Below, in pieces: positions 5,840-54,738 of a stretch of DNA of 64,000 bases. The stretch lies in the sequence record MN445185.1; one strand, given 5' to 3'. Position numbers and translations under genes: made by a program. The notes under the pieces were generated by a model. The model was not told the DNA's origin. It searched no databases and was given only the letters and a program-made list of their open reading frames with translations. Every line of letters begins with the position of its first letter. The first letter of the stretch is position 1.

Positions 5840-5915
5840 TTTCAGATATATATTACCTAGGTGATAGAAGACAATCTATCAACTCAATCGACTATTAATC
5901 TAAAGGAGTATTGCC
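5840..5915 (+). promoter_or_regulatory. Early promoter-hairpin-leader cassette, copy 1
   Basis: TTTCAGATATATATTACCTAGG contains the phiKZ-type early motif TATATTAC (5849-56); hairpin 5862-81; AATCGACTATTAATCTAAAGGAG leader. Confidence 0.8.
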
Positions 5916-6059
5916 ATGTTAACTCGTAACCATAAACGTGCCATCTTCGCCATCGTTGCTGTTGTTGCTTTCGCGGTATTGTCTATCACTGTAACTCAAG
6001 ATTACAACAAATGCATCGATAACGGTAACTCTGTTGCCATGTGTACAGGTCGCGGCTAA
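5916..6059 (+). CDS. Small single-pass membrane protein (47 aa), not in ORF track
   Basis: AAGGAG RBS; MLTRNHKRAIFAIVAVVAFAVLSITVTQDYNKCIDNGNSVAMCTGRG; TAATG coupling to the next ORF. Confidence 0.8.
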   Translation: MLTRNHKRAIFAIVAVVAFAVLSITVTQDYNKCIDNGNSVAMCTGRG

Positions 6060-6241
6060 TGGACTTTTCTGATACGCAGTTTGCCGAGTTCTTATCTCAC
6101 CCGCGTGTTAAACGTGAGTGGGATAATCTCACTAACGGTGTTCGTCATCAGGACGAAGAAGAAATTGTTCACGTTACCGCGCAAGTCTTACTCGTCTCAC
6201 CGACAGGTAATGTGTTTCCAATGCAGCAGGAGATTTACTAA
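6059..6241 (+). CDS. Hypothetical protein (60 aa)
   Basis: Start overlaps the upstream stop (TAATG); coupled to the next ORF. Confidence 0.7.
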   Translation: MDFSDTQFAEFLSHPRVKREWDNLTNGVRHQDEEEIVHVTAQVLLVSPTGNVFPMQQEIY

Positions 6242-6429
6242 TGGGCGTTTTAGTTAATTACGATGGTAAAAACGGAATCGTGCTTCGCGAAGTGGAAGAT
6301 AACGAAACAGTAGAGGTGAATCCGCAAACCTCAGAACGTACGTTTATCGTGGGGCCGAAAAGCGCATTACCGAAGCCGGACTGGAAAGAAGAGCTGGCGA
6401 AGTTCCGTGGGGAACTCGGGAAGAAGTAG
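6241..6429 (+). CDS. Hypothetical protein (62 aa)
   Basis: AGGAG RBS, TAATG coupling, followed by a terminator. Confidence 0.75.
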   Translation: MGVLVNYDGKNGIVLREVEDNETVEVNPQTSERTFIVGPKSALPKPDWKEELAKFRGELGKK

Positions 6430-6441
6430 TATAGATAATTT

Positions 6442-6470
6442 AATACCACCTACGGGTGGTATTATTTTTT
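6442..6470 (+). terminator. Rho-independent terminator
   Basis: AATACCACC-TACG-GGTGGTATT followed by a T-tract. Confidence 0.8.
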
Positions 6471-6481
6471 GCCTAAGGAAC

Positions 6482-6904
6482 ATGAAAATGATTAATGAGA
6501 AGCTCCAAAAGTATTTAAAGAACGACACTGACTGGATGGTTCTTGACCAGTACGGACGATTTGTTCCGCTATCCAAGGATTCCCCTATACCCCGTGACAA
6601 GGCGATTTATATTCCTGACGGTAAGGGTGGCTATCGTTTCTGGGAAGGCCAGGAAGTAAAAGAGGAAATGTTCTACATGGAGCCGAAGTTCCGTGCAGCG
6701 TTCCCATCGAAAAATATTAACGGATATGTTTACAACGCAATTCCGCCAATCACGCATCCTAACTTTGAGGTTGTGAACTACCCCGCAACTGTTCTGGATT
6801 GGCAACGTGCCATTAGTGAACACTACACGATTCCGCTTGAAGGTGTTTACTTCCCATTCCGTGATATTAGTTTAGATGACTTTATTAACTCTCTTAAGGA
6901 CTAA
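6482..6904 (+). CDS. Hypothetical protein
   Basis: AAGGA RBS before ATG 6482; the ORF-track extension runs through a terminator. Confidence 0.7.
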   Translation: MKMINEKLQKYLKNDTDWMVLDQYGRFVPLSKDSPIPRDKAIYIPDGKGGYRFWEGQEVKEEMFYMEPKFRAAFPSKNINGYVYNAIPPITHPNFEVVNYPATVLDWQRAISEHYTIPLEGVYFPFRDISLDDFINSLKD

Positions 6905-6908
6905 AAAA

Positions 6909-7769
6909 ATGTACAGCATTACTGATTTTATCAAAAGTTCAGATTTCCCCCTACCTCCAGACCACGAAGTATTGGCTAGCGATCCGTTAACCGATGCGGC
7001 CATTGTCCAGCTGGACCGTGACAAACGTCGTACTTACGTCGTGTTGGTCGAAGGAAAGAGCTACGGCCTGTCTTCTTACGACCTGGAGCAGCAAGAGCGC
7101 TTCCTCGATGAAAACCGCAAAACGTCAATGTATAGCGCTATCTCGCGCGCGTTGTGCAAGGTAATGGCGACGATCACGGACAGCAAAAAGCGCGTCGCCG
7201 TGCTACAGGGTATCAATGCGCTAACGACCAAAATCCAACAACTTGAAGGTTTCCATTGCCCACGATTGGAAGCCGCACAGAAGGATGCTAAGGGTGATGA
7301 GGCCATGGTGCTGTTTGGAGGCAATACTGTCTTTGCAACAGCTGAAGCTTGTTATCTCACCTATCCAACCTTTAACTATACGCCAATCAGCGACACCGTA
7401 GACGGGATTAAAGTAGAGAACGTCGTGCAATGGGGTCGCGCAAATCTCAAGTTTGTGATGTCCCATGAAGAAGAAAATCAAGACGGCCTTGGCCAGAAGA
7501 TTCAACGTTGGTTCACGGCACGTTTGGACGCCGACTGGGAAGCGCATGTTAACGCACAGCTTCGTAAATTTCACGCGGTGGTCGCATTGTTAAAAGAAAA
7601 TACTCCTGCCCCGAAACAATCGAAGGCACCGGTGGTTGGCTGGACGTGTTCCGGCTGTAACCGCAACCATGTCGCCACAGTACCGAGAACCCATCGCTAC
7701 ACTTCGCAGACGATGAACATTGCTTGTCCGGCTTGCGGCAAGATCAACGAAGTTGATTATAAACCGTAG
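6909..7769 (+). CDS. Hypothetical protein with C-terminal zinc ribbon
   Basis: CSGC...CPAC pairs at the C-terminus. Confidence 0.7.
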   Translation: MYSITDFIKSSDFPLPPDHEVLASDPLTDAAIVQLDRDKRRTYVVLVEGKSYGLSSYDLEQQERFLDENRKTSMYSAISRALCKVMATITDSKKRVAVLQGINALTTKIQQLEGFHCPRLEAAQKDAKGDEAMVLFGGNTVFATAEACYLTYPTFNYTPISDTVDGIKVENVVQWGRANLKFVMSHEEENQDGLGQKIQRWFTARLDADWEAHVNAQLRKFHAVVALLKENTPAPKQSKAPVVGWTCSGCNRNHVATVPRTHRYTSQTMNIACPACGKINEVDYKP

Positions 7770-7775
7770 TAGTAC

Positions 7776-7810
7776 CCCCTCTTACCTTCGGGTAAGAGGG
7801 TTTTATATTT
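7776..7810 (+). terminator. Rho-independent terminator
   Basis: CCCTCTTACC-TTCG-GGTAAGAGGG followed by T-rich sequence; 26 nt identical to 34789-34814. Confidence 0.85.
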
Positions 7811-7818
7811 ATTTTCCG

Positions 7819-7857
7819 AAAAGAAAATAAAAGGCGCTCTCTCCCGAAGGAGAGAGC
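7819..7857 (-). terminator. Rho-independent terminator (minus strand)
   Basis: GCTCTCTCC-CGAA-GGAGAGAGC (UUCG loop on minus) preceded by an A-tract on plus. Confidence 0.8.
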
Positions 7858-7883
7858 TTATTCACATCCACTTAGAGGTTAAC

Positions 7884-8030
7884 ATGAATACCTTTATGCA
7901 ACAACTGCGTCAGCAACAGCTGAAACAAGTCGCTTTTCAACAACGTCTGCAAGAGGTTACCCGCCAACCGCAGACTTCCACCCGTACCATTAAAGGACTA
8001 GGAGGTGAGATAATACTCAACAAGAGATAA
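7884..8030 (+). CDS. Gln-rich small ORF (48 aa), not in ORF track
   Basis: GAGG RBS; MNTFMQQLRQQQLKQVAFQQRLQEVTRQPQTSTRTIKGLGGEIILNKR. Confidence 0.5.
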   Translation: MNTFMQQLRQQQLKQVAFQQRLQEVTRQPQTSTRTIKGLGGEIILNKR

Positions 8031-8040
8031 CATGAATATT

Positions 8041-8092
8041 TGCATGGACTAACTGTACCCGAGTGTTCACAGCACTCGGGTTATTCCATGCA
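8041..8092. other. Long intergenic stem-loop
   Basis: TGCATGGA(8041-48)/TCCATGCA(8085-92) and ACCCGAGTG(8057-65)/CACTCGGGT(8073-81). Confidence 0.7.
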
Positions 8093-8175
8093 TATAAATA
8101 GTTCGTCGTATTTTTTTTTGATCTTGGCAGGACGCATAAACTGCCCGTAGGGGAGCTTAGGCTCCCCAGTGTTCG

Positions 8176-9738
8176 TTAGAACAAATCATCACCCATTCCA
8201 CCGGTGAAGAAGTTGATAGACGACGCTGTTACGGTTTCTTCTTTATCACAATCCCAAGGCAGGATGCCAACATCCTGGAAAGGTATCACTGTGTAGTGAT
8301 AAGATTCTTTAGTATCGATAATGGTGCGGTGCTTACCGCGTTGAACTTCTAAGAAGCTATGGCCGTTGACCACACGCTTGTTAAAATACATTTCACCATC
8401 GGCCTCGTTATCAAGGCTCGAACAACTATCGTAAAGACCACGACCAGGTAAGTTCTTACAGAAACCTACCGGGTCTAACGCTTTTAAGCGCTTACCTTCT
8501 GGGGAAATCTGGTGTGGGGCAATTAAGAACCCACGGTTGCGTACCACTTGGATGTTACGAGCAATACGATAAATTTCTTTGATATCACTCCCGGCAATAC
8601 CGTTGCCGTGTCCTGCTTTGCTGATTGTGCCTAAGTAGTCTGCGCGAATGCCAACAACATGATAACCGCGACGACGTAAGTCGAGAATAAGGTCGTTGAT
8701 GTAGTGCACTTTAAAATCGGAGTTGGTGTGCTTTTGGAAAACGTAGTCCCAACCGTTTGCGCGAATCTTACCACAGAGGTAATCAGACATTGCTGTTGTG
8801 TGTGCTAACTTCTCTTCAGCGGTTGCATCCTGTGCAATGGTCATCTGTGGAACTTGTCCTTCAAAATGACCGTACAGTGCTTGATAGCCGTAAGCTAAGT
8901 TAACGTCGAGTTCGTTTTCTAAACTCAAGTCAAGAATAATTGGTTGCAGTGTGCCCTTCACATCCGCCATTACTTTCTCAGGCGTGTTGAAGATAGGAAT
9001 CGACAAGCTCAGTAAGAGACTGAACAAAGACTTACAGTTAAAAGGTAACGCCGGCATTAGCCACAGTTCTTCGGTAATCCCTTTGTTACAACCGAGCATT
9101 TGGTTAATGGCTTTCCAGCCCGTCTGCAAACCATTACCTGCTGCTTTCTTGTTAATCGAGTCGAACACTTTAACAAACGGAGCCCGATTATCTGTAACCA
9201 GCTCACCGACCAGCGATGGAATCTTATTATGAGAGCGTTCACCGAACGTAGATAGCGCCTCTTTGAGTTCGAGCACTGCGGTGTTCAGATCAACACGTGT
9301 CTCAGTTCCATTCAATGCTCCGAACGCGCGACCCATTTTTGTTTTGAGTTCGACGCTCTGTAAACATTGACGTAATTGGAAATAATATTGAGACAGTTGT
9401 CGATTAAGATGCTCGGTACGTTTGTCTTCTTCCTCGGGCAAATCGTCTTCGAGGAATTTGGTAATCGTATCGTATAGAGGACGTACTTGAGTGGTGGCCA
9501 GCTTCAAGCGCTTCATAACGCTCGCGTGGTCGTATTCCATGCCGCCGTCTATGATAGATGTGATAATGTCCTTGATCTCGATGAGTGCAAAGCGCTCTTC
9601 GCCATCTTCCGCATATTCCGGAAGCTTGATCTGCATCAGAACTTTTCTTATGACATCATGATCCTTGCTAGGGTCCGTCAGCATAGATTCTGTATACAGT
9701 GCGGCTAAGGCGGTTATCAACATCATTTTACTATTCAT
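8176..9738 (-). CDS. dnaB: DnaB-like SF4 replicative helicase (phiKZ gp118-like)
   Basis: TGWKAINQMLG, variant Walker A ALPFNCKS, Walker B GIRADYL, APHQIS, KHR motif; position next to MCP. Confidence 0.85.
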   Translation of the reverse strand: MNSKMMLITALAALYTESMLTDPSKDHDVIRKVLMQIKLPEYAEDGEERFALIEIKDIITSIIDGGMEYDHASVMKRLKLATTQVRPLYDTITKFLEDDLPEEEDKRTEHLNRQLSQYYFQLRQCLQSVELKTKMGRAFGALNGTETRVDLNTAVLELKEALSTFGERSHNKIPSLVGELVTDNRAPFVKVFDSINKKAAGNGLQTGWKAINQMLGCNKGITEELWLMPALPFNCKSLFSLLLSLSIPIFNTPEKVMADVKGTLQPIILDLSLENELDVNLAYGYQALYGHFEGQVPQMTIAQDATAEEKLAHTTAMSDYLCGKIRANGWDYVFQKHTNSDFKVHYINDLILDLRRRGYHVVGIRADYLGTISKAGHGNGIAGSDIKEIYRIARNIQVVRNRGFLIAPHQISPEGKRLKALDPVGFCKNLPGRGLYDSCSSLDNEADGEMYFNKRVVNGHSFLEVQRGKHRTIIDTKESYHYTVIPFQDVGILPWDCDKEETVTASSINFFTGGMGDDLF

Positions 9739-9752
9739 GGAGCATCCTTAAA

Positions 9753-10277
9753 ATGCAAATTCGTTTTAGTCCACCGTGGGAAGTTCAATCTAACATAGAT
9801 AAAGGGGCTGGCGTTAAAAAGTTGGAGGAACTCCAAGCAAGCTTCTTTAACTGGTTATATGACTGCTCGTCGGGCTTTAGTTCCATCATACTGCCAGTGA
9901 GTGACCCTATTTCGATTTATAAATCGATTATGGCACCACCTGCACTTCCGACTCTTTATTATGACCAGGTCTTAAACCTGGTTGAGAAAGGTACGAATGA
10001 AACCCTTGCTGATTTATATGGGGAATCATTCGACGGTCGTTTACGTTGGGTGTTCTCACAACGTGGCGATGTTGTTGTGGCGTCTTTTGCAGAAGCTAAA
10101 TCCGGACCGGGTTTTTCTTTAAGTGAAGACCACGCTGCGAAAAAGATGTTCTGCGCAGAACTTTTTAAATATATGCGTCCCAAGACTCGTGTCGTGGATG
10201 ATACGTTCAGTACGTCGACGCAGTTTGCTGCGCACGAAGTGCTGACGCAGTTGTACGCATGTCATTTATCTAAATAA
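9753..10277 (+). CDS. Conserved protein upstream of MCP (probable head protein)
   Basis: 174-aa ORF from ATG 9753; synteny with phiKZ-like helicase-X-MCP order. Confidence 0.6.
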   Translation: MQIRFSPPWEVQSNIDKGAGVKKLEELQASFFNWLYDCSSGFSSIILPVSDPISIYKSIMAPPALPTLYYDQVLNLVEKGTNETLADLYGESFDGRLRWVFSQRGDVVVASFAEAKSGPGFSLSEDHAAKKMFCAELFKYMRPKTRVVDDTFSTSTQFAAHEVLTQLYACHLSK

Positions 10278-10289
10278 GGTAAACTTGAA

Positions 10290-12590: not shown

Positions 12591-12620
12591 TAATCCGTAA
12601 GGATTACGTTGCCTAAGATT

Positions 12621-12658
12621 AGCTTACTCCCTTCGGGGAGTAAGCTTTTTCTTTTTTT
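12621..12658 (+). terminator. Rho-independent terminator of MCP operon
   Basis: AGCTTACTCCC-TTCG-GGGAGTAAGCT followed by a long T-tract. Confidence 0.95.
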
Positions 12659-12670
12659 CTAAAAATTTAT

Positions 12671-12693
12671 AGATAGATATTATCTTAGGGAGA
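12671..12693 (+). promoter_or_regulatory. Early-type promoter, AGATAGATRTTATC class
   Basis: AGATAGATATTATCTTAGGGAGA; same motif at 12869, 33175, 41718, 50118. Confidence 0.7.
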
Positions 12694-12725
12694 GAGTCAT
12701 TCGGTTTTAACTTAAGGAGACAGTA

Positions 12726-12869
12726 ATGGAAGTCAATTTAGAGAGATCAAGACTAGTTGCACCGATGTTTGATGGGCGCGGTTTTATGGCGAACGGTCAC
12801 CACGTTTGATACCCTAAAGTTTTTTACGTTAAGGGCACTGGGTATGAACCCGTGCCCAAAGTAATCTGA
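12726..12869 (+). pseudogene. 47-codon ORF interrupted by an in-frame TGA (12807-09); pseudogene or readthrough
   Basis: AAGGAG RBS; MEVNLERSRLVAPMFDGRGFMANGHHV*YPKVFYVKGTGYEPVPKVI*. Confidence 0.45.
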
Positions 12870-12890
12870 GATAGATATTATCTACGTGAA
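12869..12890 (+). promoter_or_regulatory. Early-type promoter, AGATAGATRTTATC class
   Basis: AGATAGATATTATCTACGTGAA upstream of 12923 and the RNAP gene. Confidence 0.65.
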
Positions 12891-12922
12891 TAATTCTTTT
12901 GGTATTATTACTGGGATGTTCA

Positions 12923-13927
12923 ATGAACCGTTATGATTTAGACGTTCAGCCAACGCTAACCCAGCGGCCCATGCACCGTGGTGCCGTGTCGAAGACTATC
13001 ACGTACGAAAATAATACCGGGTTTCCCATATACGTCACTGAACTCAGTGGCGGGCATTTTGTTTTAGCCCCGTCGTCCACCACAGCGGCGGAATTTGGGA
13101 TTGTGATTTACGTGACCTATACGGTGTTTGCGAACGGTGCTAACCTATCTGGTTTGCGCGACGCACATTCGCCAAAGCAGTATGCGCAGATATGTAAGGA
13201 ATTAACTACGAACGGCGAAACAACGCTGATGTATGTAGTTGATGATATCGGAGCGTTAATGCGAGGCGACTTGGTGGTGTTGAAGAAGCTAGGAATGGCT
13301 TTCTCTACCCAACCAGTAAAACTCGATTCTGAGGTTATTGGTAAGCCAGGAGGGGATCGTAAAGAATTTGCCTTGGGCGTGGTAGTTGTACAGAAGTACG
13401 AAGACCCAGCACCTTTAAAGTGGCTGAGGTTCTATACAACGATGTTGGAAGTCGAACCGATTCGATCGAAGTATTACGACGAGGGTATATACATGGTAAT
13501 CGGTGGTGCGGAGTGCGTCGAAGGGGGTAAGATGATAATGTACTCTTTCGATGACCCGATGTCCCCGTTCCGGGCGTTTGCATCTGAAGATGAAGCGAGG
13601 CGTTATCGGTGGCTCGATAACATTCCAGAGTTGCGAGATGTTCGTGCGAAGCTGGAAGCCACGTATCAGGCCAAGTTGCAAGATCTCGATGAGAAAAAGA
13701 ATCGGCAAGACCTCGATTATCGTACACAACTTAATAATCTGGCGCTAGAGAAGGAGAGGATTAACACCCTTAACACAATCCAGACGAATGAGCTTAAGTT
13801 GCGTTCCGATGTTCGTAAAGACCAATACGAGTCCCGAGCTTATCAGCGAAAAGATAGCTCGGAGTTCTTGAAATCCATTCCCGCGTATTTGGCTGCAGGG
13901 GTAGCACTCGTTGGGATGATTCTCTGA
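12923..13927 (+). CDS. Conserved protein with C-terminal coiled coil and terminal hydrophobic helix (phiKZ gp122-like position)
   Basis: Heptad-like region, then IPAYLAAGVALVGMIL at the C-terminus. Confidence 0.6.
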   Translation: MNRYDLDVQPTLTQRPMHRGAVSKTITYENNTGFPIYVTELSGGHFVLAPSSTTAAEFGIVIYVTYTVFANGANLSGLRDAHSPKQYAQICKELTTNGETTLMYVVDDIGALMRGDLVVLKKLGMAFSTQPVKLDSEVIGKPGGDRKEFALGVVVVQKYEDPAPLKWLRFYTTMLEVEPIRSKYYDEGIYMVIGGAECVEGGKMIMYSFDDPMSPFRAFASEDEARRYRWLDNIPELRDVRAKLEATYQAKLQDLDEKKNRQDLDYRTQLNNLALEKERINTLNTIQTNELKLRSDVRKDQYESRAYQRKDSSEFLKSIPAYLAAGVALVGMIL

Positions 13928-13938
13928 GGGAGGCCGGT

Positions 13939-33136: not shown

Positions 33137-33174
33137 ACCCACTCCTTCGGGAGTGGGTCGACTCTATTTTTTTT
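33137..33174 (+). terminator. Rho-independent terminator
   Basis: ACCCACTCC-TTCG-GGAGTGGGT followed by a T-tract. Confidence 0.85.
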
Positions 33175-33197
33175 GGATAGATGTTATCTTAGGGAGA
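33175..33197 (+). promoter_or_regulatory. Early-type promoter, AGATAGATRTTATC class
   Basis: GGATAGATGTTATCTTAGGGAGA. Confidence 0.7.
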
Positions 33198-33291
33198 CGT
33201 GCAAAAATTACGTTTCATCCTTAGCATATGCTAGAAGCCGTTGTGAGTCGGTTAAAACTCACCAACTTAAACTTAAAAGCGAGTAAACAAA

Positions 33292-34159: not shown

Positions 34160-34783
34160 ATGTTAAACTCAGTGGCGCTGGATGGTCCAGATTTTTCTGG
34201 CAAATCAACACTCGCGAAAATGATTCAAGCGATGTTGCGCTCCGCTGGCGTTAATGTCATCATCGTCAATCACCCGACGAATACCACTGAAGCCGGTATT
34301 AGTGCACGTTCTCTGGTTATCCAGCACGCTTCTAACGAACGCATTGCTAAAGCGATGTGTCTGGATTTCCAATACACGATGGATTTCGTTGTACCAGAGC
34401 ACGATGTCGTTATTTTTGACCGTTTTTGTCAATCGACTATTGTCTACCAGGGCGTCGATGGTAAAGGGGAAGTTTTCCGTTCGCGGGTATTAGACCACAT
34501 TAACGCACCAAAGCTTTACGTGGCAACCGATGTATCTTACGAAACCGCCACAGAACGCTTTAAGAAGCGCGTAGAGGCACAAGGTAAGAACTGGGATGAT
34601 GAGGTACTGACAGCGAAGTATCTGCGCTCACAGACCGATTGGGACGCCTTACGCGACCATTACCGTTTTGCTTTCCACATCACCACAGATGGCGGCGATA
34701 AGTTCCCGCTGATGCGTGTTACGGCTGACGACGATATAGCGTTACAAGCCGCGCGTATCGTTGAACGTATTCTGGCAGGTTAG
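34160..34783 (+). CDS. tmk: Thymidylate (dTMP) kinase
   Basis: VALDGPDFSGKST P-loop, HPT, VVIFDRF..STIVYQG. Confidence 0.9.
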   Translation: MLNSVALDGPDFSGKSTLAKMIQAMLRSAGVNVIIVNHPTNTTEAGISARSLVIQHASNERIAKAMCLDFQYTMDFVVPEHDVVIFDRFCQSTIVYQGVDGKGEVFRSRVLDHINAPKLYVATDVSYETATERFKKRVEAQGKNWDDEVLTAKYLRSQTDWDALRDHYRFAFHITTDGGDKFPLMRVTADDDIALQAARIVERILAG

Positions 34784-34788: not shown

Positions 34789-34827
34789 CCCCTCTTACCT
34801 TCGGGTAAGAGGGTATTGTCTTTTTTT
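34789..34827 (+). terminator. Rho-independent terminator
   Basis: Same 26-nt hairpin as 7776-7801, followed by a T-tract. Confidence 0.85.
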
Positions 34828-34871: not shown

Positions 34872-34947
34872 TTTCAGATATATATTACTTAGGTGAGAGT
34901 TACTACTAAACTCTCTAATCGACTATTAATCTAAAAGGAGTATTCTA
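34872..34947 (+). promoter_or_regulatory. Early promoter-hairpin-leader cassette, copy 2
   Basis: TTTCAGATATATATTACTTAGG; hairpin GAGAGTT/AACTCTC 34895-34915; TAATCGACTATTAATCTAAAAGGAG. Confidence 0.8.
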
Positions 34948-35313
34948 ATGCGTTTTAAACATCAAACCGTTGTGTTGGCAAAGAAAGCGTTTTTGGTTCG
35001 TCTTTCTTACATTATTACTCGTGTCACTGCGAAGGACGTTACGCAGAAAGACATTGCGTTATTAGTAGGCTGCTCACCGTCACAAATATCTGCGATTAAA
35101 AATGAACGTGAGAAGGCCGTGACTATCGAAACATTGATGCGGGTTGCTGATACACTGCGCCTGAATTACGAAATCGTCTACCGTTCCATCAACGGCAAAT
35201 GCCGCCATAGCTTTAAAATTGAATCATGCATCGATTACATGAACAACTGTCCTATCCGGGTACGAGAAACAGGACTTAAAGTCATGGCACGTAAACCTTC
35301 TGCAGTAATGTAG
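34948..35313 (+). CDS. XRE/Cro-family helix-turn-helix transcriptional regulator
   Basis: VTQKDIALLVGCSPSQISAIKN...TIETLMRVADTL. Confidence 0.85.
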   Translation: MRFKHQTVVLAKKAFLVRLSYIITRVTAKDVTQKDIALLVGCSPSQISAIKNEREKAVTIETLMRVADTLRLNYEIVYRSINGKCRHSFKIESCIDYMNNCPIRVRETGLKVMARKPSAVM

Positions 35314-41717: not shown

Positions 41718-41744
41718 TTTTCAGATAGATGTTATTTTACTGAA
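41718..41744 (+). promoter_or_regulatory. Early-type promoter, AGATAGATRTTAT class
   Basis: TTTTCAGATAGATGTTATTTTACTGAA. Confidence 0.65.
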
Positions 41745-46036: not shown

Positions 46037-46048
46037 CTGGAGGCGTTA

Positions 46049-46588: not shown

Positions 46589-47073
46589 TGGCCAGCCCAG
46601 TTAAAAAGCAAACATTTGAGAGCTTACCATTTTATACCGATATCACCAACGTGAAAGATGGGATGTTCTTGTTTATCAAAGATGGGAAAGCGTATCAGTA
46701 CCCGCTCGAGATGTTGGGTGTCCAGAAGGTTGCTCAGGGTGTCGTTATTCGTGATGCGGCGTATGAGTTGGAAGCGGCAGCAGCCACTGATTGGTACCTA
46801 GGACTGTCGCAACCGGAAACCGATCTCACTATTAAACCTGATGGAGTATTGGGGGCATTTCGGTACACGCTCAACCTGACTATTCTTCAGGGAACGGGAG
46901 CCAACAAAATTAACTGGCCTTCCAACGTGAAGTTCCCCCATGATGCATACCCGGTGCTGTCGTACCAGAAAGGGAAATCGGACATGATTACCCTGACTAC
47001 AATCGACGGCGGTTACACCTGGAAAGGTGGCGTTAGTGGAACAGGATATACAGAATGGGTAGAAACTCCTTAA
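46588..47073 (+). CDS. Tail-fibre-associated small protein
   Basis: LTILQGTGANKINWPSNVKF...PVLS...G..D.ITL.T.DGG.TW.G, a motif seen in phage fibre/baseplate proteins. Confidence 0.6.
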   Translation: MASPVKKQTFESLPFYTDITNVKDGMFLFIKDGKAYQYPLEMLGVQKVAQGVVIRDAAYELEAAAATDWYLGLSQPETDLTIKPDGVLGAFRYTLNLTILQGTGANKINWPSNVKFPHDAYPVLSYQKGKSDMITLTTIDGGYTWKGGVSGTGYTEWVETP

Positions 47074-50072: not shown

Positions 50073-50077
50073 GTGTA

Positions 50078-50120
50078 TACCAGCTATCCTTCGGGGTGGC
50101 TGGTACGCTTTATTTTATTT
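50078..50120 (+). terminator. Rho-independent terminator
   Basis: TACCAGCTATCC-TTCG-GGGTGGCTGGTA followed by a T-rich tract. Confidence 0.85.
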
Positions 50121-50143
50121 CAGATAGATGTTATCTCAGTGAA
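50118..50143 (+). promoter_or_regulatory. Early-type promoter, AGATAGATRTTATC class
   Basis: TTTCAGATAGATGTTATCTCAGTGAA, followed by hairpin CTCTGA/TCAGAG 50145-70. Confidence 0.7.
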
Positions 50144-50199
50144 CCTCTGAAATTTACGTTTCAATCAGAGCTTATGTCATGTATTAAGGAGCACTTAAA

Positions 50200-50532
50200 A
50201 TGTCTAAAGTCTATCACATTGCGGTATTGCGTCAGGCAACTGACCTTGAAAGCGACCGTGAACTTCGAATGCAGGAAGCCATTCTGAGCACTGTTAAAGA
50301 ACTTAACCAAGCAAACAATTTCGATGCACGCTTCGAAGCGTTACCAGTAAGCCGCAGTGCTTTCTACGGCAGTCAAATACTGGCAACCCAGTATGCGATG
50401 GCTTTAAGTGACTTGCGCAATAACCCTAGCCCAGAGACCGCGGCGAAGATGAACAAACTGTCGCTATGGATGAATAACCTGGATGTCCCCGCAGCATCCA
50501 CTGTAAGCGGTTTGGGGGTGGTCAATGGGTAG
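50200..50532 (+). CDS. Hypothetical early protein
   Basis: 110 aa, AAGGAG RBS. Confidence 0.75.
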   Translation: MSKVYHIAVLRQATDLESDRELRMQEAILSTVKELNQANNFDARFEALPVSRSAFYGSQILATQYAMALSDLRNNPSPETAAKMNKLSLWMNNLDVPAASTVSGLGVVNG

Positions 50533-50860
50533 AGTAATCCGTGTTGCCAGACCAATGCGTCTCAATAGGACACCAATGATAAATCGTGATATCGGTGAAG
50601 CTGTAAAACAGTTGTCGAATATCGACGGTTACACCTTTAAAGTGATAACACTGTACGACTACCCAGAAGGCAAAGTTCCGCAAGAGGCGCTGGATAAATT
50701 CGTTAATGTATTAGACGATTGCCTTAAGAGCCCAACGGACGTAAATCTTATCAAACTAAACACCATGTCCCTTGAACTGTACCGGCTGCGTAAAATGGGC
50801 ATTCATGCTCGCATCGGTAAAGGTGACCAAACGTTGGCCGAATACTGGGCTAAACAATAA
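50525..50860 (+). CDS. Hypothetical protein
   Basis: 111 aa, overlapping start. Confidence 0.7.
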   Translation: MGRVIRVARPMRLNRTPMINRDIGEAVKQLSNIDGYTFKVITLYDYPEGKVPQEALDKFVNVLDDCLKSPTDVNLIKLNTMSLELYRLRKMGIHARIGKGDQTLAEYWAKQ

Positions 50861-50887
50861 GCTATTTTAAATCCTAAGGAGCATTAA

Positions 50888-51406
50888 GTGAATATTATCA
50901 TGAACCTGTATACCAAACGGGAACGTAACGTTTTAGAATCTGGCGTTGCCCCGGAAGTATTGGCTGCGGGGGATATTAGTATCGACCCATTGAAAGTGAA
51001 AGTCGCAGAACTGTTCCCTCGCGACGAATGGGACATCTGGTATTTCCGTTGTTCGTCGGTATTGAATGCAATCAAACAACTGTCTGATTATCAACCTGGT
51101 CCGTATATCGGTACTTGGCACTGGTACGTTCCACGCACACCAAACTTCCTTTACCTGCACGACGATGATAAACGTACTCATATTCGCACTGTAGCGACGC
51201 CTGCGCGTTTGGAGCGTTATCTGGAGCTAATCCACGACCGGCCTCGTAACGAGCTGCAAAGCATCGTAGAGGTGCTCAGACAGGTACCTTTAGACGGTAT
51301 CCTGGAACTGGACATGAAAATCGCCGATCGTCCGAGACATTACTGGGAATTTTCCTGGGTAGACGCGAAGTACGAAAACCATAACGTTATCTATCTGAAG
51401 CGTTAA
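50888..51406 (+). CDS. Hypothetical protein
   Basis: 172 aa, AAGGAG RBS. Confidence 0.7.
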   Translation: MNIIMNLYTKRERNVLESGVAPEVLAAGDISIDPLKVKVAELFPRDEWDIWYFRCSSVLNAIKQLSDYQPGPYIGTWHWYVPRTPNFLYLHDDDKRTHIRTVATPARLERYLELIHDRPRNELQSIVEVLRQVPLDGILELDMKIADRPRHYWEFSWVDAKYENHNVIYLKR

Positions 51407-51416
51407 GGGGGACAGG

Positions 51417-51737
51417 ATGTTGAACCGGTTACTTGCGCTGATTAACAAGCGACAAAAACAACTGTACGAAGAAAATCGAGAATTAGCTGCCGCTATCCGT
51501 CGTGTACAGGCCGATAACTTGCAGTTAAGACACGACCTCGCGAAACTAGGTGTTAACGCGAGTAGGCTTTGCACGCACATTAGCCGCTGCCACGATATCA
51601 TCGAACGTATTGGACACTACCATCTTACGTCTCCTGCGCGTCGCGTCTATGACGCGGCCGTCCAGGGATTAAAAGATACCAGGAATGCGTACGACGAGAT
51701 GTTAGAAGAGTTTAGCAAACGTGAGGATAAATACTAA
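51417..51737 (+). CDS. Hypothetical coiled-coil protein
   Basis: 106 aa, heptad pattern. Confidence 0.7.
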   Translation: MLNRLLALINKRQKQLYEENRELAAAIRRVQADNLQLRHDLAKLGVNASRLCTHISRCHDIIERIGHYHLTSPARRVYDAAVQGLKDTRNAYDEMLEEFSKREDKY

Positions 51738-52120
51738 TGGAAATGCCAACGAACACCGACTTAGCACTGGCAATCGAACACATGAAAAACCATCAGCTGA
51801 CGTTACTGAATGCAGGCACAGAAGGGCAACGTCAAGGGTATGCGCTCGTTGCAAAAGCAGCGTTAGAACTTAACAAGATTCTACTCGCTAAACTTTACGG
51901 GCTGGAAAACAGCGTGCTCCATGCGTCGCACCTGGGCGAAGCCAGCGAGTTAGTTACGAATGTGCGGCTGTATGCAAGTCGTGAAATGGAACGTTTAACC
52001 AACGAATGGAATGTCCAGTGTAACGGCGAGCGTGCTGATAAAGATCCGCGTAAAGTCGCACTGACGCCGGGCGTGTACATCAAAGACGGCACCATTGACG
52101 AATACAGCGGATTTAACTGA
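51737..52120 (+). CDS. Hypothetical helical protein
   Basis: 127 aa, TAATG coupling. Confidence 0.7.
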   Translation: MEMPTNTDLALAIEHMKNHQLTLLNAGTEGQRQGYALVAKAALELNKILLAKLYGLENSVLHASHLGEASELVTNVRLYASREMERLTNEWNVQCNGERADKDPRKVALTPGVYIKDGTIDEYSGFN

Positions 52121-52143
52121 TCGGCGGATAAGGGTGATTGTGA

Positions 52144-52569
52144 ATGGTAACCATAGACGTAGCTATCTCTATCGAGCTTCAACGCATCGGTGTAGGTACA
52201 CTAAAACTTCGTTATCGTGATTTACCGCATTACAACAAGATGTTTGATGTTGGGGTGATAAAGTTTTATAACCGGTACGGGCCAAGAGAACTATGTCTAT
52301 GGTTTGTCGAGTTAGCGATAACTTATGGCGAGTTTTATCATCCTAATGTACCGCATGTCGAACATGTGTCAAGAGGGCACCTGGAAACTTCCAGAGAGTT
52401 CTATCAGCGATTGTATGGCGCGATGGAGGAGTCCGCACCCATCGACTACGACGTACCACCTGAACTGTTATTAATCGACCATGAAGGAGAAGCCGGTGTC
52501 TATTTCATTACGGGGACTGACTATTCACGAGATTCAGAAATATTTACTCGAGGGCGGGAAACTGACTGA
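52144..52569 (+). CDS. Hypothetical protein
   Basis: 141-aa ORF in operon. Confidence 0.65.
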   Translation: MVTIDVAISIELQRIGVGTLKLRYRDLPHYNKMFDVGVIKFYNRYGPRELCLWFVELAITYGEFYHPNVPHVEHVSRGHLETSREFYQRLYGAMEESAPIDYDVPPELLLIDHEGEAGVYFITGTDYSRDSEIFTRGRETD

Positions 52570-52801
52570 CGACTATCAAACCGCAGATATGTTGCTACAG
52601 TCATTTGTACCGTTACGTGCTGAGTATTACGAAATCGCGTTCCTGGGCGATGAATATTGTGTCCGCACGCAAGGGCGTGAATACGAAGCAGTACGCGTTC
52701 CACGCACACTCGGTGGGGTGATGATGCTCATCGCTAATATCGAAGCACTCAATGCGAAATGTGCGTTATACATCGCACAGGGAGGCCGCAATGGATTTTA
52801 A
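52481..52801 (+). CDS. Hypothetical protein (start uncertain)
   Basis: 106-aa ORF filling the operon gap. Confidence 0.55.
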   Translation: MKEKPVSISLRGLTIHEIQKYLLEGGKLTDDYQTADMLLQSFVPLRAEYYEIAFLGDEYCVRTQGREYEAVRVPRTLGGVMMLIANIEALNAKCALYIAQGGRNGF

Positions 52802-52949
52802 GTGGGAAGTGTTATCGTTAGCAGAAGTTCGTAACAGAATCGATAGAGCTATTGCAAGGAGAAAACATGTTCGGCCTGTTTCAGGAGAAAAAACAGTTGC
52901 GTCGCCAATTAGAAATACTGGAATTGGAACTCAGCCTATCAAAGACTGA
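52791..52949 (+). CDS. Possible small basic protein (52 aa)
   Basis: GGAGG RBS before ATG 52791; overlaps the next gene by 83 nt. Confidence 0.4.
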   Translation: MDFKWEVLSLAEVRNRIDRAIARRKHVRPVSGEKTVASPIRNTGIGTQPIKD

Positions 52950-53268
52950 GTTGGAAATTTCGAAAGAAGCGTGGAAAAGAAATCTTGATGAATCTTTCGA
53001 AGAACGCCGTAAGCTTACACGACTACTTTCTGAGGAACAGTCTAAGAACCGGAAACTCGAAGATGAGCTACGAGATGCCCGACGAGATGCGGATCTGCGT
53101 GACAAGATGTTAGGACGGAACCTGGGTGCCCTAATCTATTTCATAGAGCAACGTTGGGAACCAAAAACACTCCTTGAGTTGCTCTATGAAAAACTCTCCT
53201 GTGTAGGTAAACGTTCTGCGGCCATCGAGTATTTCCGTAGTCACGGTTTCGAGGTAAAAGATGAGTAA
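52867..53268 (+). CDS. Hypothetical coiled-coil protein
   Basis: AAGGAG RBS before ATG 52867; long charged heptad helix. Confidence 0.7.
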   Translation: MFGLFQEKKQLRRQLEILELELSLSKTELEISKEAWKRNLDESFEERRKLTRLLSEEQSKNRKLEDELRDARRDADLRDKMLGRNLGALIYFIEQRWEPKTLLELLYEKLSCVGKRSAAIEYFRSHGFEVKDE

Positions 53269-53346
53269 ATTAGAGGTTGGCAGGCTGTTCGTTAATCCTT
53301 AAAAAACAACAGTTTCAAATTAGTTACGACCATAAGGAGTATTAAA

Positions 53347-54150
53347 ATGTTAAAGCCACGCAAACAGAAAAGATTACAGTTTGTCAAAATAGTACATCCA
53401 CAGTCCCGTCGTGTTACAGGTGGACGTCTCTACGTGGGTAAACACCGTAGTCGTCTTATCACCTGGTCGGCAATGGCCAACGTAGCCACCCAACTCCAGG
53501 CAATGGTTGAAGACCGTTGCCAGTTAAAAGGGGATTTCTTTCAAGAGAAGAAACCCTATCGTGATATCTTCCGTACACTAAAAGCGTGCTGGGTACTCAG
53601 CTGGGTGCCTGGCCGCGAACAACTTTATTTTCTGCGTAAGTTCCCACGCCCTATGCCGAAGGAAAACATTAGCGTTTTCTTAGACAAACTAAAACGCTTT
53701 AATGACATCGGCATAAACGCTAATAAAGAGCAGGTTTCTGCTACAGTAGCAGCCCGAAAACACTTACGCGATTATGTGGCCGATCGAGATGTTGAGTTCG
53801 CTTATATGACGCCGACTGTACCGCTGCTAAACGGTGATGCATCGAAAGCGAAGATGGAAGAGATCGCGTTGAAGTTTCCTAACATCAGACACATCGCACC
53901 AGACGCGGTACTACAGCTGAACACTGAAGGCTGCACGCGTTTACCGACAGTCTCTGACACGGTGTTAGTATCAACACCTGATGTTCCTGATGGAAAGTCG
54001 TTCCTTGAAATGATAAAGAAACGTACAGAGGGTGGATATCAACCGATCTTTCTGGATTCCCTTTCACAACATCCTGAAGTAGAACAAGAATTTAACATGA
54101 ACACTAACAGCCCTTACGACTCCCTATACAAGGACGATAATGATGCTTAA
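53347..54150 (+). CDS. Hypothetical protein
   Basis: 267 aa, AAGGAG RBS. Confidence 0.75.
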   Translation: MLKPRKQKRLQFVKIVHPQSRRVTGGRLYVGKHRSRLITWSAMANVATQLQAMVEDRCQLKGDFFQEKKPYRDIFRTLKACWVLSWVPGREQLYFLRKFPRPMPKENISVFLDKLKRFNDIGINANKEQVSATVAARKHLRDYVADRDVEFAYMTPTVPLLNGDASKAKMEEIALKFPNIRHIAPDAVLQLNTEGCTRLPTVSDTVLVSTPDVPDGKSFLEMIKKRTEGGYQPIFLDSLSQHPEVEQEFNMNTNSPYDSLYKDDNDA

Positions 54151-54532
54151 GCCTAAGAAACGTAAAGATGGTGCGGTCATTTTCTCTCCGAGAATCGCTG
54201 TAGCAGTTGGTAAGAAATTACTGGTCCAGGACGGTAAGTGGGTCAGTGACGGATTCAGTCAGTACACCTCGCTATGCATCTCTTCCGAGATGAATCAGAT
54301 GCACGGGAAGAAAGTACGTGACCGACGATCTCAGATGCCAAAAGTTATCCGTGTTGTGGCCGGCTGGTATAAGCGATACATGAAAAAGAACTTCCCACAC
54401 GCAGCGCCGCCGTTTGAAGAAGGGTCTTTTGTTCGTACAGAACCCACCGAAGCGGGTGGCGAATTACCGGTGCGTACCGGCACGGCGTATTCGACGCTGA
54501 CTTCCTTGTGTCGTCAGTCGTACGAAAAGTAG
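54140..54532 (+). CDS. Hypothetical protein (possible frameshift; -1 frame open to 54573)
   Basis: 130 aa; N-terminus MLKPKKRK resembles MLKPRKQK of the upstream gene. Confidence 0.6.
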   Translation: MMLKPKKRKDGAVIFSPRIAVAVGKKLLVQDGKWVSDGFSQYTSLCISSEMNQMHGKKVRDRRSQMPKVIRVVAGWYKRYMKKNFPHAAPPFEEGSFVRTEPTEAGGELPVRTGTAYSTLTSLCRQSYEK

Positions 54533-54604
54533 AAGGCGTTGAAGGACACTCTACTCCACATCAACTAGGATGACGCTTATCCCAAGGGTAGCGAATAAAG
54601 CAGT

Positions 54605-54640
54605 ACCCTACTCCTTCGGGAGTAGGGTTTCTTCTTTTTT
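54605..54640 (+). terminator. Rho-independent terminator
   Basis: ACCCTACTCC-TTCG-GGAGTAGGGT followed by a T-tract. Confidence 0.9.
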
Positions 54641-54661
54641 GCCTAGTCCGATTACAATTAT

Positions 54662-54738
54662 TTTCAGATATATATTACTTAGGTGAGAGTTAACAATTAA
54701 CTCTTATCTAATCGACCATTATCTTAAGGAGTTTTAAC
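54662..54738 (+). promoter_or_regulatory. Early promoter-hairpin-leader cassette, copy 3
   Basis: TTTCAGATATATATTACTTAGG; hairpin 54684-54706; TAATCGACCATTATCTTAAGGAG. Confidence 0.8.

What the first reader, a model, noticed from the sequence alone, without database searches (positions are those of the whole stretch)
5840..54738. Three-copy early expression cassette with a covarying 5' hairpin and conserved pre-SD motif
Seen at 5840, 34872 and 54662: a near-identical TTTCAGATATATATTACYTAGGT, then a stem-loop whose sequence differs while pairing is kept (TGATAGA/TCTATCA; GAGAGTT/AACTCTC; TGAGAGTTAA/TTAACTCTTA), then AATCGACYATTA(A)TCTWAAGGAG before the start codon. Covariation argues for an RNA structure rather than a DNA operator. 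Each copy follows a terminator and heads unrelated genes. Inference: a portable regulatory unit (5' stabiliser plus a translational enhancer or protein-binding site, possibly relevant to mRNA export from the injection vesicle or nucleus), reminiscent of the promoter-stem-loop cassettes of T4-type phages.
Basis: partly seen in the sequence, partly recalled or inferred. Interest (0 to 1): 0.7.

Follow-up and report, generated by a model that had tools for sequence, protein, structure and literature searches.

The report
Jumbo-phage early promoters with hairpin leaders
These are three strong copies of the early promoter read by the RNA polymerase that an SPN3US-like giant phage injects with its DNA, each followed by a small RNA hairpin at the very start of the message and a shared motif before the ribosome-binding site. 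The promoter type is already known from phage phiKZ, while I found no published description of the two leader features.

Summary
The window is Escherichia phage vB_EcoM_EC001 (Seoulvirus, SPN3US-like jumbo phage), genome positions 62001-126000. The 23-nt box is a phiKZ-type virion-RNA-polymerase early promoter. Its core TATATTAC-(6N)-G matches phiKZ's own early promoters and mirrors AR9's AAATATATATTAT-(6N)-G(+1). The predicted start (G at 5863, 34895, 54685) puts each hairpin at +1 of the RNA.

The three copies are the strongest members of a family of about 22 sites genome-wide (8 in the window, 7 with hairpins). Across 28 distinct leaders from related phages, the stem shows compensatory changes (89% paired against 74% shuffled, 0/500). 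G·U pairs outnumber A·C, which favours a sense-strand RNA structure.

The parts are separable. Most weaker promoters lack the hairpin. AATCGACYAT occurs 13 times on the + strand and never on the - strand, mostly about 32 nt before start codons of genes in early operons, with or without a promoter.

Most likely mechanism: promoter, then a 5'-terminal stabilising stem-loop, then a leader element of unresolved function. This is the architecture of T7 gene 10. It is not a T4 PeSL. No start-site data exist for this phage. Moderate interest.

The parts
5680..5704 (+). Terminator-like hairpin (10 bp) with T-rich tail, ending the upstream unit before copy 1
5840..5862 (+). Class A early promoter box, copy 1 (core TATATTAC 5849-5856, then 6 nt, predicted +1 = G 5863)
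5863..5880 (+). 5'-terminal hairpin of the predicted transcript, copy 1 (GATAGA agacaa TCTATC)
5886..5897 (+). AATCGACTATTA leader motif, copy 1. It is unpaired in the predicted fold. SD GGAG is at 5905-5908 and ATG at 5916
34790..34813 (+). Terminator-like hairpin (CTTCGG loop) with T-run before copy 2
34872..34894 (+). Class A early promoter box, copy 2 (predicted +1 = G 34895)
34895..34915 (+). 5'-terminal hairpin, copy 2 (GAGAGTT actacta AACTCTC)
34917..34928 (+). AATCGACTATTA leader motif, copy 2. ATG is at 34948, the start of a Cro/C1-type HTH protein gene
54605..54628 (+). Terminator-like hairpin (CTTCGG loop) with T-run before copy 3
54662..54684 (+). Class A early promoter box, copy 3 (predicted +1 = G 54685)
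54685..54705 (+). 5'-terminal hairpin, copy 3 (GAGAGTTAA caa TTAACTCTT)
54710..54721 (+). AATCGACCATTA leader motif, copy 3. ATG is at 54739
12670..12690 (+). Class B member of the same promoter family (TAGATAGATATTAT-cttagg-G), no 5' hairpin
12868..12888 (+). Class B promoter-family site (GAGATAGATATTAT-ctacgt-G), no 5' hairpin
33174..33194 (+). Weaker class B promoter-family site (TGGATAGATGTTAT-cttagg-G). Its predicted 5' end also folds from +1
41722..41742 (+). Class B promoter-family site (CAGATAGATGTTAT-tttact-G)
50121..50141 (+). Class B promoter-family site (CAGATAGATGTTAT-ctcagt-G)
52473..52482 (+). AATCGACCAT copy with no promoter or hairpin, directly before GAAGGAG and the annotated start of MGA_133 (52496)

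Best explanation
The three sites are phiKZ-type early promoters of an SPN3US-like chimallivirus. They are read by the multisubunit RNA polymerase that is packaged in the virion and injected with the DNA. The conserved box holds the AT-rich recognition element (core TATATTAC, with an A/T-rich stretch upstream). Transcription is predicted to start at the invariant G six bases after the core: window 5863, 34895 and 54685. The first 18-21 nt of each transcript then fold into a stem-loop that begins at +1. Its sequence differs between copies, but its pairing is maintained. The most likely role (inferred) is to hide the 5' triphosphate end from RppH and from RNase E's 5'-end sensing, which would stabilise very early messages. 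After the hairpin comes a single-stranded leader carrying AAUCGACYAUUA, then a strong SD (AAGGAG) and the AUG. That motif is a separate module that marks the translation-initiation regions of a subset of genes in early operons. My best guess (inferred, weak) is that it acts on the RNA as a binding site for a translational regulator or enhancer factor. What is shown: the sequence family, its match to mapped phiKZ and AR9 promoters, stem covariation, and the distribution of the motif. What is inferred: the exact start site, stabilisation, and the motif's function.
For: Identity and promoter class.
- The window is 100% identical to phage EC001 (Seoulvirus SPN3US), which encodes split RNAP beta/beta' subunits.
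- A review states that every RNAP-encoding jumbo phage has a conserved AT-rich motif of about 10 nt centred near -10 before its early operons.
- AR9's early consensus is AAATATATATTAT-(6N)-G(+1), and in phiKZ and phiR1-37 the start lies 6 nt after the consensus.
- phiKZ's own genome shows TATATTAC-(6N)-G, including the site before PHIKZ054, a gene with a mapped early-motif start site.
- The family here has about 22 sites, all on the + strand. G at the predicted +1 is invariant in the 18 seed sites.
- Sites lie directly upstream of RNAP-subunit genes that are the non-virion set by elimination.

Hairpin.
- All 7 class A copies fold from +1 to +3.
- Stems of at least 6 bp occur in 64% of 39 distinct leaders, against 13% after shuffling.
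- In the Infernal alignment of 28 distinct leaders, 89.3% of cells are paired against 73.6% shuffled (0/500). Four of 8 pairs change on both sides. The covariation score is 0.362, against 0.134 shuffled and 0.02-0.06 for slid partners.
- G·U extends stems in 20 leaders and A·C in 5.
- The hairpin is kept in MFE and centroid folds of all three full leaders, with the motif unpaired.
- 5' structure blocks RppH and RNase E. The T7 gene 10 stem-loop stabilises mRNA.

Motif.
- There are 13 exact copies on the + strand and 0 on the - strand, against about 0.5 expected per strand. Eleven are just upstream of an SD and start codon.
- Twelve of 13 lie within 3 kb downstream of a promoter-family site, P about 6e-7.
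- GACYAT precedes the SD at 27 of 286 sites in relatives, against a mean of 4 for random 6-mers.
- In two copies the motif starts at +3 of a transcript predicted from another promoter.
Against: - No start-site or expression data exist for this phage or any Seoulvirus that I could find. The +1 assignment rests on homology to AR9, phiKZ and phiR1-37.
- The hairpins are modest (-6 to -9 kcal/mol). Whole-leader z-scores are unremarkable (-0.2 to -1.05).
- About a quarter of related leaders lack a clean stem.
- Most class B promoters have no hairpin, so it is not required for promoter function.
- The covariation alignment was fitted to the structure and the sequences are related, so the shuffle counts are not probabilities.
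- Much of the G·U excess comes from the terminal G(+1)·U pair, which lies next to a T-rich stretch.
- The motif's function is unresolved. It also sits directly after terminators with no visible promoter. That fits a second promoter as well as an RNA element.
Confidence: 0.75

Rival explanations
1. AATCGACYATTA is a second promoter, for the non-virion RNAP in the middle phase. The gene would then be transcribed early from the upstream box and later from a start just before the SD.
For: The motif sits directly after terminator hairpins and T-runs with nothing else before the SD (EC001 genome 166166 and 185338; relatives L019, L023, L042). Its distance to the ATG is short and fairly fixed. PHIKZ054 has early plus middle start sites. 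The layout AATC-(6N)-TA loosely recalls AR9's late AACA-(6N)-TA.
Against: At genome 25223 and 59578 the motif begins at +3 of transcripts predicted from a class B promoter and from a TTACG-N14-TATG site, so a promoter is already present there. A separate, more widespread candidate for the non-virion RNAP promoter exists and resembles phiKZ's TATG type. In Erwinia-phage relatives the motif abuts the SD (GACYATCAAGGA), which would leave a leader of only about 13 nt. The motif is absent from structural genes.
Confidence: 0.2
2. The similarity reflects recent duplication, gene conversion or cassette mobility, as in T4 PeSLs. Only the promoter is functional, and the hairpin and motif are passengers.
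For: The same leader precedes unrelated genes within and between genomes. In divergent phages, only the cassette of about 80 nt keeps nucleotide similarity. The SPFM16 record is joined exactly at two promoter boxes.
Against: The pattern is conserved box, then variable but still-paired stem, then conserved motif. That is the signature of selection, not of recent copying. The modules occur independently. The SPN3US/EC001 indel next to copy 3 ends about 30 nt before the terminator, not in the cassette. The SPFM16 junction deletes the major capsid gene, so it is probably an artefact or a defective genome.
Confidence: 0.12
3. The inverted repeat acts in DNA as part of promoter recognition, as in phage N4 virion-RNAP hairpin promoters, with the start site downstream of it.
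For: N4's injected RNAP recognises DNA hairpins (established knowledge; the N4 virion RNAP review appears's list but was not read). The repeat lies immediately next to the conserved box.
Against: The polymerase here is the multisubunit phiKZ/AR9 type, whose mapped start is 6 nt after the AT-rich core. About 12 family members have the same box and the invariant G but no hairpin. G·U pairs are favoured over A·C, so pairing holds on the sense strand only. Loop and stem lengths vary widely.
Confidence: 0.05
4. The +1 hairpin followed by a U-rich stretch is a pause or attenuation signal, or makes a short regulatory RNA, rather than a stabiliser.
For: Many stems are followed by TTTT(A). The class A copy at genome 164259 carries a true GC-rich terminator inside its leader. 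phiKZ and 201phi2-1 make abundant short RNAs by premature termination in 5' UTRs.
Against: The stems are AT-rich and weak for intrinsic termination. All three window copies continue into a strong SD and ORF only 10-20 nt later. Termination at +25 would abort expression of the genes that these strongest promoters serve.
Confidence: 0.1
5. AATCGACYATTA, read as (T)AAT-CGACY-ATT(A), is a DNA operator for a phage regulator such as the Cro/C1-type HTH protein encoded right after copy 2. Binding would shut off or retune early units.
For: The short flanking arms TAAT/ATTA are symmetric. An HTH protein is itself expressed from a class A cassette that carries the motif. The motif is restricted to early operons.
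Against: The conserved core is asymmetric. All 13 copies have one orientation relative to transcription. The dyad arms are not kept in Erwinia-phage versions. Spacing tracks the start codon rather than the promoter.
Confidence: 0.1

Closest known systems
phiKZ / AR9 / phiR1-37 virion-RNAP early promoters
   Same: Same core and geometry. phiKZ has TATATTAC-(6N)-G and AR9 has AAATATATATTAT-(6N)-G(+1). All have an A/T-rich upstream region, tens of copies on one strand, and positions before early operons including the non-virion RNAP genes. The phage encodes the same split multisubunit RNAPs.
   Different: Here the flanks are more extended and conserved (TTTCAGA..., YTAGGTGAG). The strongest subclass carries a +1 hairpin and a shared leader motif. 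In phiKZ only 3 of 8 sampled early leaders start with a stem. No experimental mapping exists for the Seoulvirus group.
T7 class III promoter with gene 10 leader
   Same: The order of parts is the same: phage-RNAP promoter, then a stem-loop starting at +1 that stabilises the mRNA, then a single-stranded leader with an enhancer, then a strong SD. This is what it most works like.
   Different: Unrelated polymerase (single-subunit) and sequences. The T7 enhancer is thought to pair with 16S rRNA (my knowledge), whereas AATCGACYAUUA shows no such complementarity.
5'-terminal stabiliser stem-loops of E. coli mRNAs (ompA type)
   Same: A stem with 0-2 unpaired 5' nucleotides. Both RppH and RNase E need a single-stranded 5' end.
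   Different: Function is not tested here. The hairpins are shorter and AT-rich. The transcripts are made by a phage polymerase, possibly inside the early infection vesicle.
T4-type PeSL cassettes (promoter-early stem-loop)
   Same: Composite terminator-plus-early-promoter motifs of about 100 bp, repeated before small genes of unknown function and ending at the SD and start codon.
   Different: PeSLs use sigma-70-like promoters and their stem-loop is the terminator or attenuator, usually GGGG...CCCC, placed within or upstream of the promoter. Here there is no sigma-70 match, the covarying stem is in the transcript, and cassette-mediated recombination was not demonstrated.
T4 RegA operators and RegB cleavage sites on early mRNAs
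   Same: A short RNA signal in or next to the translation-initiation region of many early messages, allowing coordinated post-transcriptional control (my knowledge). This is a possible model for AATCGACYAUUA.
   Different: No homologue of either protein was identified, the sequence is different, and there is no functional evidence.
phiKZ and 201phi2-1 short RNAs derived from 5' UTRs
   Same: Promoter plus structured leader plus terminator inside the 5' UTR. This matches the class A copy at EC001 genome 164259, outside the window.
   Different: The three window copies have no terminator in the leader.

Membership tests
phiKZ-type virion-RNAP early promoter | Host phage encodes virion and non-virion multisubunit RNAPs split into beta/beta' fragments | tested here: met
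   EC001 annotation lists six RNAP beta-subunit genes. The SPN3US virion RNAP is gp240/241/218/42/244.
phiKZ-type virion-RNAP early promoter | Highly conserved AT-rich element of about 10 nt centred near -10, present in many copies | tested here: met
   The family AGATAKATATTAY has about 22 sites. The core is identical to phiKZ's TATATTAC.
phiKZ-type virion-RNAP early promoter | Conserved start nucleotide 6 nt downstream of the consensus | tested here: inconclusive
   G is invariant at that position in the 18 seed sites, but the 5' end itself was not mapped.
phiKZ-type virion-RNAP early promoter | Located before early operons, including non-virion RNAP genes, with a strong strand bias | tested here: met
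   All strong sites are on the + strand. Sites at genome 16651/16744 and 30360 precede the RNAP genes that are not in the virion set.
phiKZ-type virion-RNAP early promoter | Transcription within minutes of infection, independent of host RNAP and of new protein synthesis | not testable with these tools
   Needs RNA from infected cells with and without rifampicin or chloramphenicol.
5'-terminal stabiliser stem-loop | Stem begins within about 0-2 nt of the 5' end of the primary transcript | tested here: inconclusive
   Stems start at +1 to +3 of the predicted transcript in 7 of 7 class A copies. This depends on the predicted start site.
5'-terminal stabiliser stem-loop | Pairing, not sequence, is conserved | tested here: met
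   Covariation and controls. Seventeen distinct 5' arms. G·U exceeds A·C.
5'-terminal stabiliser stem-loop | Lengthens mRNA half-life in an RppH/RNase E-dependent way | not testable with these tools
   General mechanism. No data for these leaders.
T4-type PeSL | Sigma-70-like early promoter (-35/-10) | tested here: not met
   No sigma-70-type match on the + strand at any of the three cassettes. Definition.
T4-type PeSL | The stem-loop is a terminator or attenuator within or upstream of the promoter | tested here: not met
   A separate terminator lies 33-135 nt upstream. The covarying stem is downstream of the predicted start.
T4-type PeSL | Recombination between cassettes produces gene insertions, deletions or replacements among close relatives | tested here: inconclusive
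   One record (SPFM16) is joined box-to-box but deletes the capsid gene. The indel next to copy 3 ends outside the cassette.
N4-type DNA hairpin promoter | DNA hairpin upstream of the start, recognised by a single-subunit virion RNAP | tested here: not met
   The RNAP is multisubunit. The hairpin is downstream of the predicted +1 and absent from most family members.
rRNA-complementary translational enhancer (T7 epsilon type) | Leader motif complementary to 16S rRNA | tested here: not met
   The best duplex with E. coli rrsH is no better than shuffled motifs (fraction of shuffles at least as good: 0.49-0.95).
Any curated RNA family (Rfam 15) | Match at gathering score | tested here: not met
   0 matches in the whole window.

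The most novel reading that the evidence does not exclude
The 5'-terminal hairpin and the single-stranded AAUCGACYAUUA element together form an identity tag for a subset of early chimallivirus messages. A dedicated phage or host factor would read the tag to give these mRNAs preferential translation, protection or routing during the first minutes of infection, when transcription happens inside the injection vesicle. On this reading the motif would be a new cis-acting RNA signal, not a promoter or a passenger.
Probability: 0.2. Interest if true: 0.7.

Novelty: new member of a known kind. Interest (0 to 1): 0.4.

Why it matters
The injected virion RNA polymerase of chimalliviruses has been studied far less biochemically than the non-virion enzyme, and its promoters have been mapped in only a few phages. 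This analysis gives a precise, testable promoter model for the SPN3US group, which is the genetic model for giant phages in Salmonella and E. coli. It predicts start sites at single-base resolution. It shows that the strongest early units carry a structured 5' end whose pairing is under selection. It also separates out a second, undescribed leader motif that marks early-operon genes. If the hairpin protects early mRNAs from RNase E and RppH, it adds a cis-acting layer to the known protein-level attack on the degradosome by phiKZ. If the motif is a regulatory RNA site, it offers a route to studying how early messages are selected for translation. Practically, the promoter and leader are compact parts for engineering these phages.

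Tried and rejected
- 16S rRNA complementarity of the motif: no better than shuffles. Rejected.
- Rfam scan of the window: nothing.
- Sigma-70 promoter reading of the boxes: no + strand match at any cassette.
- MAFFT alignment of the leaders: ungapped, so the 3' arms were out of register and unusable for pair counting. I replaced it with an Infernal model and alignment.
- Permutation of 3' arms among pre-selected perfect stems: circular by construction, so I do not use it as evidence.
- Literature search for the motif string TATATTAC and for a Seoulvirus transcriptome: nothing relevant.
- The primary phiKZ transcription paper was not held. I read the phiKZ genome directly instead.
- Pfam and PHROGs on the genes behind the cassettes and behind the motif: apart from one HTH protein, all of unknown function. 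Gene content does not explain the motif.
- PeSL-style shuffling: breakpoints in relatives were mapped. One is probably an artefact and the other lies outside the cassette, so the idea is not supported.
- Hairpin as a general feature of all family members: rejected, since most class B sites lack it.

Full report
**1. What is there.**
The three sites exist exactly as described. The 23-mer TTTCAGATATATATTACYTAGGT occurs at 5840, 34872 and 54662 on the + strand and nowhere else in the window, even with three mismatches allowed. Shuffles give 0.00 expected. Each box is followed by a hairpin of different sequence, then AATCGACYATTA, then AAGGAG and an ATG. Each is preceded by a terminator-like hairpin with a T-run, 135, 58 and 33 nt upstream. 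The downstream genes are unrelated: a 47-aa protein, a Cro/C1-type HTH protein and a 148-aa protein of unknown function. The window has no N.

**2. Source.**
The window is 100% identical to Escherichia phage vB_EcoM_EC001 (MN445185.1) positions 62001-126000. EC001 is a 240-kb member of Seoulvirus SPN3US. SPN3US is a nucleus-forming chimallivirus. It packages a five-subunit virion RNA polymerase and also encodes a second, non-virion enzyme.

**3. The box is a phiKZ-type early promoter.**
- A review of jumbo-phage RNAPs states that every such phage has a conserved AT-rich motif of about 10 nt centred near -10 upstream of its early operons. Wherever this was tested, the motif proved to be the early promoter.
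- AR9's mapped consensus is AAATATATATTAT-(6N)-G(+1). In phiKZ and phiR1-37 the start lies 6 nt after the consensus.
- I read the first 50 kb of phiKZ directly. Its early promoters are ...TTTAAAcAGTATATTAC-(6N)-G, including the site before PHIKZ054. That gene has a mapped early-motif start site.
- The box here is ...TTTCAGATATATATTAC-(YTAGGT)-G, with the same core and the same spacing.

I fetched the rest of EC001 and scanned it. The result is a family of about 22 sites, nAGATAKATATTAY-(6N)-G, all on the + strand. G at the predicted +1 is invariant in the 18 seed sites. Eight sites lie in the window: the three reported plus 12670, 12868, 33174, 41722 and 50121. Family sites sit directly before the RNAP-subunit genes that are not part of the SPN3US virion enzyme. 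That is what early promoters must drive. No sigma-70-type match is present on the + strand.

The reported copies belong to a 'class A' subset with seven members genome-wide. They have the exact phiKZ core and extended conserved flanks. The rest ('class B', ...GATATTATCT...) are weaker matches.

**4. The hairpin.**
With +1 at the G (5863, 34895, 54685), every one of the seven class A transcripts folds into a stem that starts at +1 to +3. Energies are -5.9 to -8.7 kcal/mol, with z of -1.7 to -3.6 against dinucleotide shuffles. Most class B leaders do not fold this way.

An exact-pattern scan of IMG/VR gave 41 further class A sites in about a dozen jumbo-phage contigs of 107-246 kb. These include Erwinia phages ChrisDB and Caitlin and unnamed metagenomic phages, and they supply 37 distinct leaders.
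- Uninterrupted stems of at least 6 bp starting at +1 to +3 occur in 64% of 39 distinct leaders, against 13% when nt 5-36 are shuffled. There are 17 different 5' arms.
- MAFFT could not register the 3' arms. I therefore built a covariance model from eight leaders of one geometry and let Infernal align 35 sites, 28 of them distinct.
- On that alignment 89.3% of cells pair, against 73.6% in shuffles (0/500). Four of eight pairs change on both sides. The covariation score is 0.362, against 0.134 shuffled (0/500) and 0.02-0.06 when partners are slid by 1-3 columns.
- G·U extends the stems in 20 leaders and A·C in only 5. That favours a sense-strand RNA structure over a DNA cruciform.
- In folds of the full leaders the hairpin persists in both MFE and centroid structures.

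Caveats:
- The alignment was fitted to the structure and the sequences are related.
- Much of the G·U excess is the terminal G(+1)·U pair next to a T-rich stretch.
- The hairpins are modest, and whole-leader z-scores are unremarkable (-0.2 to -1.05).
- About a quarter of related leaders have no clean stem.
- In phiKZ, 3 of 8 sampled early leaders also begin with a stem, including PHIKZ054's. The feature is therefore neither unique to this group nor universal.

**5. Likely role of the hairpin.**
Both RppH and RNase E need a single-stranded 5' end, which explains the long-known stabilising effect of 5' structure. The +1 stem-loop of the T7 gene 10 leader stabilises mRNA and raises expression. 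A stem that begins at +1 on the strongest early messages fits that role. This is inference, since no decay data exist.

**6. The AATCGACYATTA motif is a separate module.**
- Genome-wide, AATCGACYAT occurs 13 times exactly on the + strand and never on the - strand, against about 0.5 expected per strand. Eleven copies lie just upstream of an SD and start codon.
- Only four copies follow a class A hairpin, and three more class A leaders carry one-mismatch variants.
- Other contexts: one copy begins at +3 after a class B promoter (genome 25223). One begins 1 nt after a TATG (59578). Two follow terminator hairpins directly (166166, 185338). Three lie at the end of the upstream ORF, including window 52473.
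- Twelve of the 13 lie within 3 kb downstream of a promoter-family site, while 25% of the genome does (P about 6e-7). For the eight copies not inside a cassette, seven do (P about 4e-4). The motif therefore marks translation-initiation regions of genes in early operons.
- In Erwinia-phage relatives the core GACYAT persists but abuts the SD (GACYATCAAGGA). It precedes the SD at 27 of 286 sites, against a mean of 4 for random 6-mers.
- It is unpaired in the predicted leader folds.
- It has no special complementarity to E. coli 16S rRNA.
- The genes it precedes have no known function.

Three mechanisms remain open: an RNA site for a translational regulator or enhancer factor (my preference, weak), a second promoter, or a DNA operator. 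The HTH protein made from copy 2 is a candidate binder for the operator reading.

The second-promoter reading is weakened in two ways. The motif lies at +3 of transcripts predicted from other promoters. Also, a different motif (A/T-rich, then TTACG-N14-TATG) occurs 21 times against about 7.6 expected, mostly just upstream of genes. That motif resembles phiKZ's middle and late architecture.

**7. Is it a portable cassette?**
The conserved box, variable paired stem and conserved motif argue for selection on each part rather than recent copying. The parts also occur independently.
- In divergent phages only the cassette of about 80 nt retains nucleotide similarity to the SPN3US group. Strong constraint explains this equally well.
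- Most close relatives lose homology just upstream of copy 3. Mapped against SPN3US, EC001 has about 790 extra bp (window 53788-54575), ending about 30 nt before the terminator and not inside the cassette.
- The SPFM16 record joins copy 1's box to the class B box at window 12670. That deletes 6.8 kb, including the major capsid gene, so it is probably an assembly artefact or a defective genome.
- T4 PeSLs are defined by sigma-70-like promoters and a terminator stem-loop, and recombine to shuffle ORFs. Two of those three features are not met here and the third is inconclusive.

**8. Verdict.**
- The element is a known kind, the phiKZ-type virion-RNAP early promoter.
- It is a family of about 22 sites, not three copies.
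- It is modular, not a single unit.
- It works most like the T7 gene 10 promoter and leader, not like a T4 PeSL.

I found no published description of the +1 hairpin under selection for pairing, or of the early-operon leader motif, in the literature I could search. These features give the finding moderate interest.

Noticed in passing
window 12824-12846, 33208-33230, 50154-50176 (also EC001 genome 330, 3144, 3190, 59554, 167419, 171651, 187145, 195837 and others): A recurring A/T-rich stretch followed by TTACG-N14-TATG occurs 21 times in the genome against about 7.6 expected, mostly just upstream of genes. It resembles phiKZ's middle and late promoters (a motif about 22 nt upstream plus TATG at the start), so it is a candidate non-virion RNAP promoter. 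At 33174/33208 and 50121/50154 it lies about 30 nt downstream of a class B early promoter, suggesting tandem early and middle promoters as at PHIKZ054.
   Followed up: partly
L005:4259-4360 (EC001 genome 164259-164360, outside the window): A class A promoter and +1 hairpin is followed inside the leader by a GC-rich terminator (GGCTACCCTCGGGTAGCC plus a T-run), before AATCGACTGT and the gene. This could yield a short RNA of about 50 nt or act as an attenuator, like the short RNAs derived from 5' UTRs reported for phiKZ and 201phi2-1.
   Followed up: no
window 5718-5833: Between the terminator and copy 1 there are three to four direct repeats of CCYTCTAAA at spacings of about 20-30 nt, an inverted copy (TAGAGGGT), and a 12-bp inverted repeat at 5783-5811. 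A similar GTTATAGAGGGTAT lies upstream of a class A promoter in Erwinia phage ChrisDB (L011). This may be an array of protein-binding sites.
   Followed up: partly
window 5858 and 12660-12790; L049 (Salmonella phage SPFM16, LR535915.1 65943-66073): The SPFM16 record joins copy 1's promoter box directly to the class B box at window 12670. That removes about 6.8 kb, including the helicase and major capsid genes. It is probably an assembly join at the short repeat or a defective genome.
   Followed up: partly
window 12791-12808: Between the two class B promoters at 12670 and 12868, EC001 keeps only the first 65 nt or so and the last few nt of a 699-bp gene that is intact in SPFM16 (SPFM16_00067). 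This is an internal 625-bp deletion that leaves an orphan promoter, SD and ATG.
   Followed up: partly
window 53270-54575; L048 (SPN3US 113041-113895): There is module replacement upstream of copy 3. SPN3US has a gene (SPN3US_0133) that EC001 lacks. EC001 has about 790 bp (the 3' part of MGA_136 plus MGA_137) that SPN3US and most relatives lack. The right-hand boundary is about 30 nt before the terminator of copy 3.
   Followed up: partly
window 34431-34440: An exact AATCGACTAT lies inside the thymidylate kinase gene with no SD or start after it. It is one of only two intragenic exact copies in the genome; the other is at genome 222069.
   Followed up: no
L017:2065-2100 (- strand) and L019:7960-7995: Two different jumbo-phage genomes carry nearly identical class A leaders (GAGAGTTAATACAAATCTCTY...AATCGACCATTTAACCTAAAGGAA), but the coding sequences that follow differ from the first codons. 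This could be leader-bounded gene replacement.
   Followed up: no
L046:31194-31240 (phiKZ): One phiKZ early-type site (TATATTAT-gtgggg-G) is followed from +1 by a very stable GC hairpin (GGGACCC...GGGTCCC, -16 kcal/mol) in the long leader before PHIKZ038.
   Followed up: no
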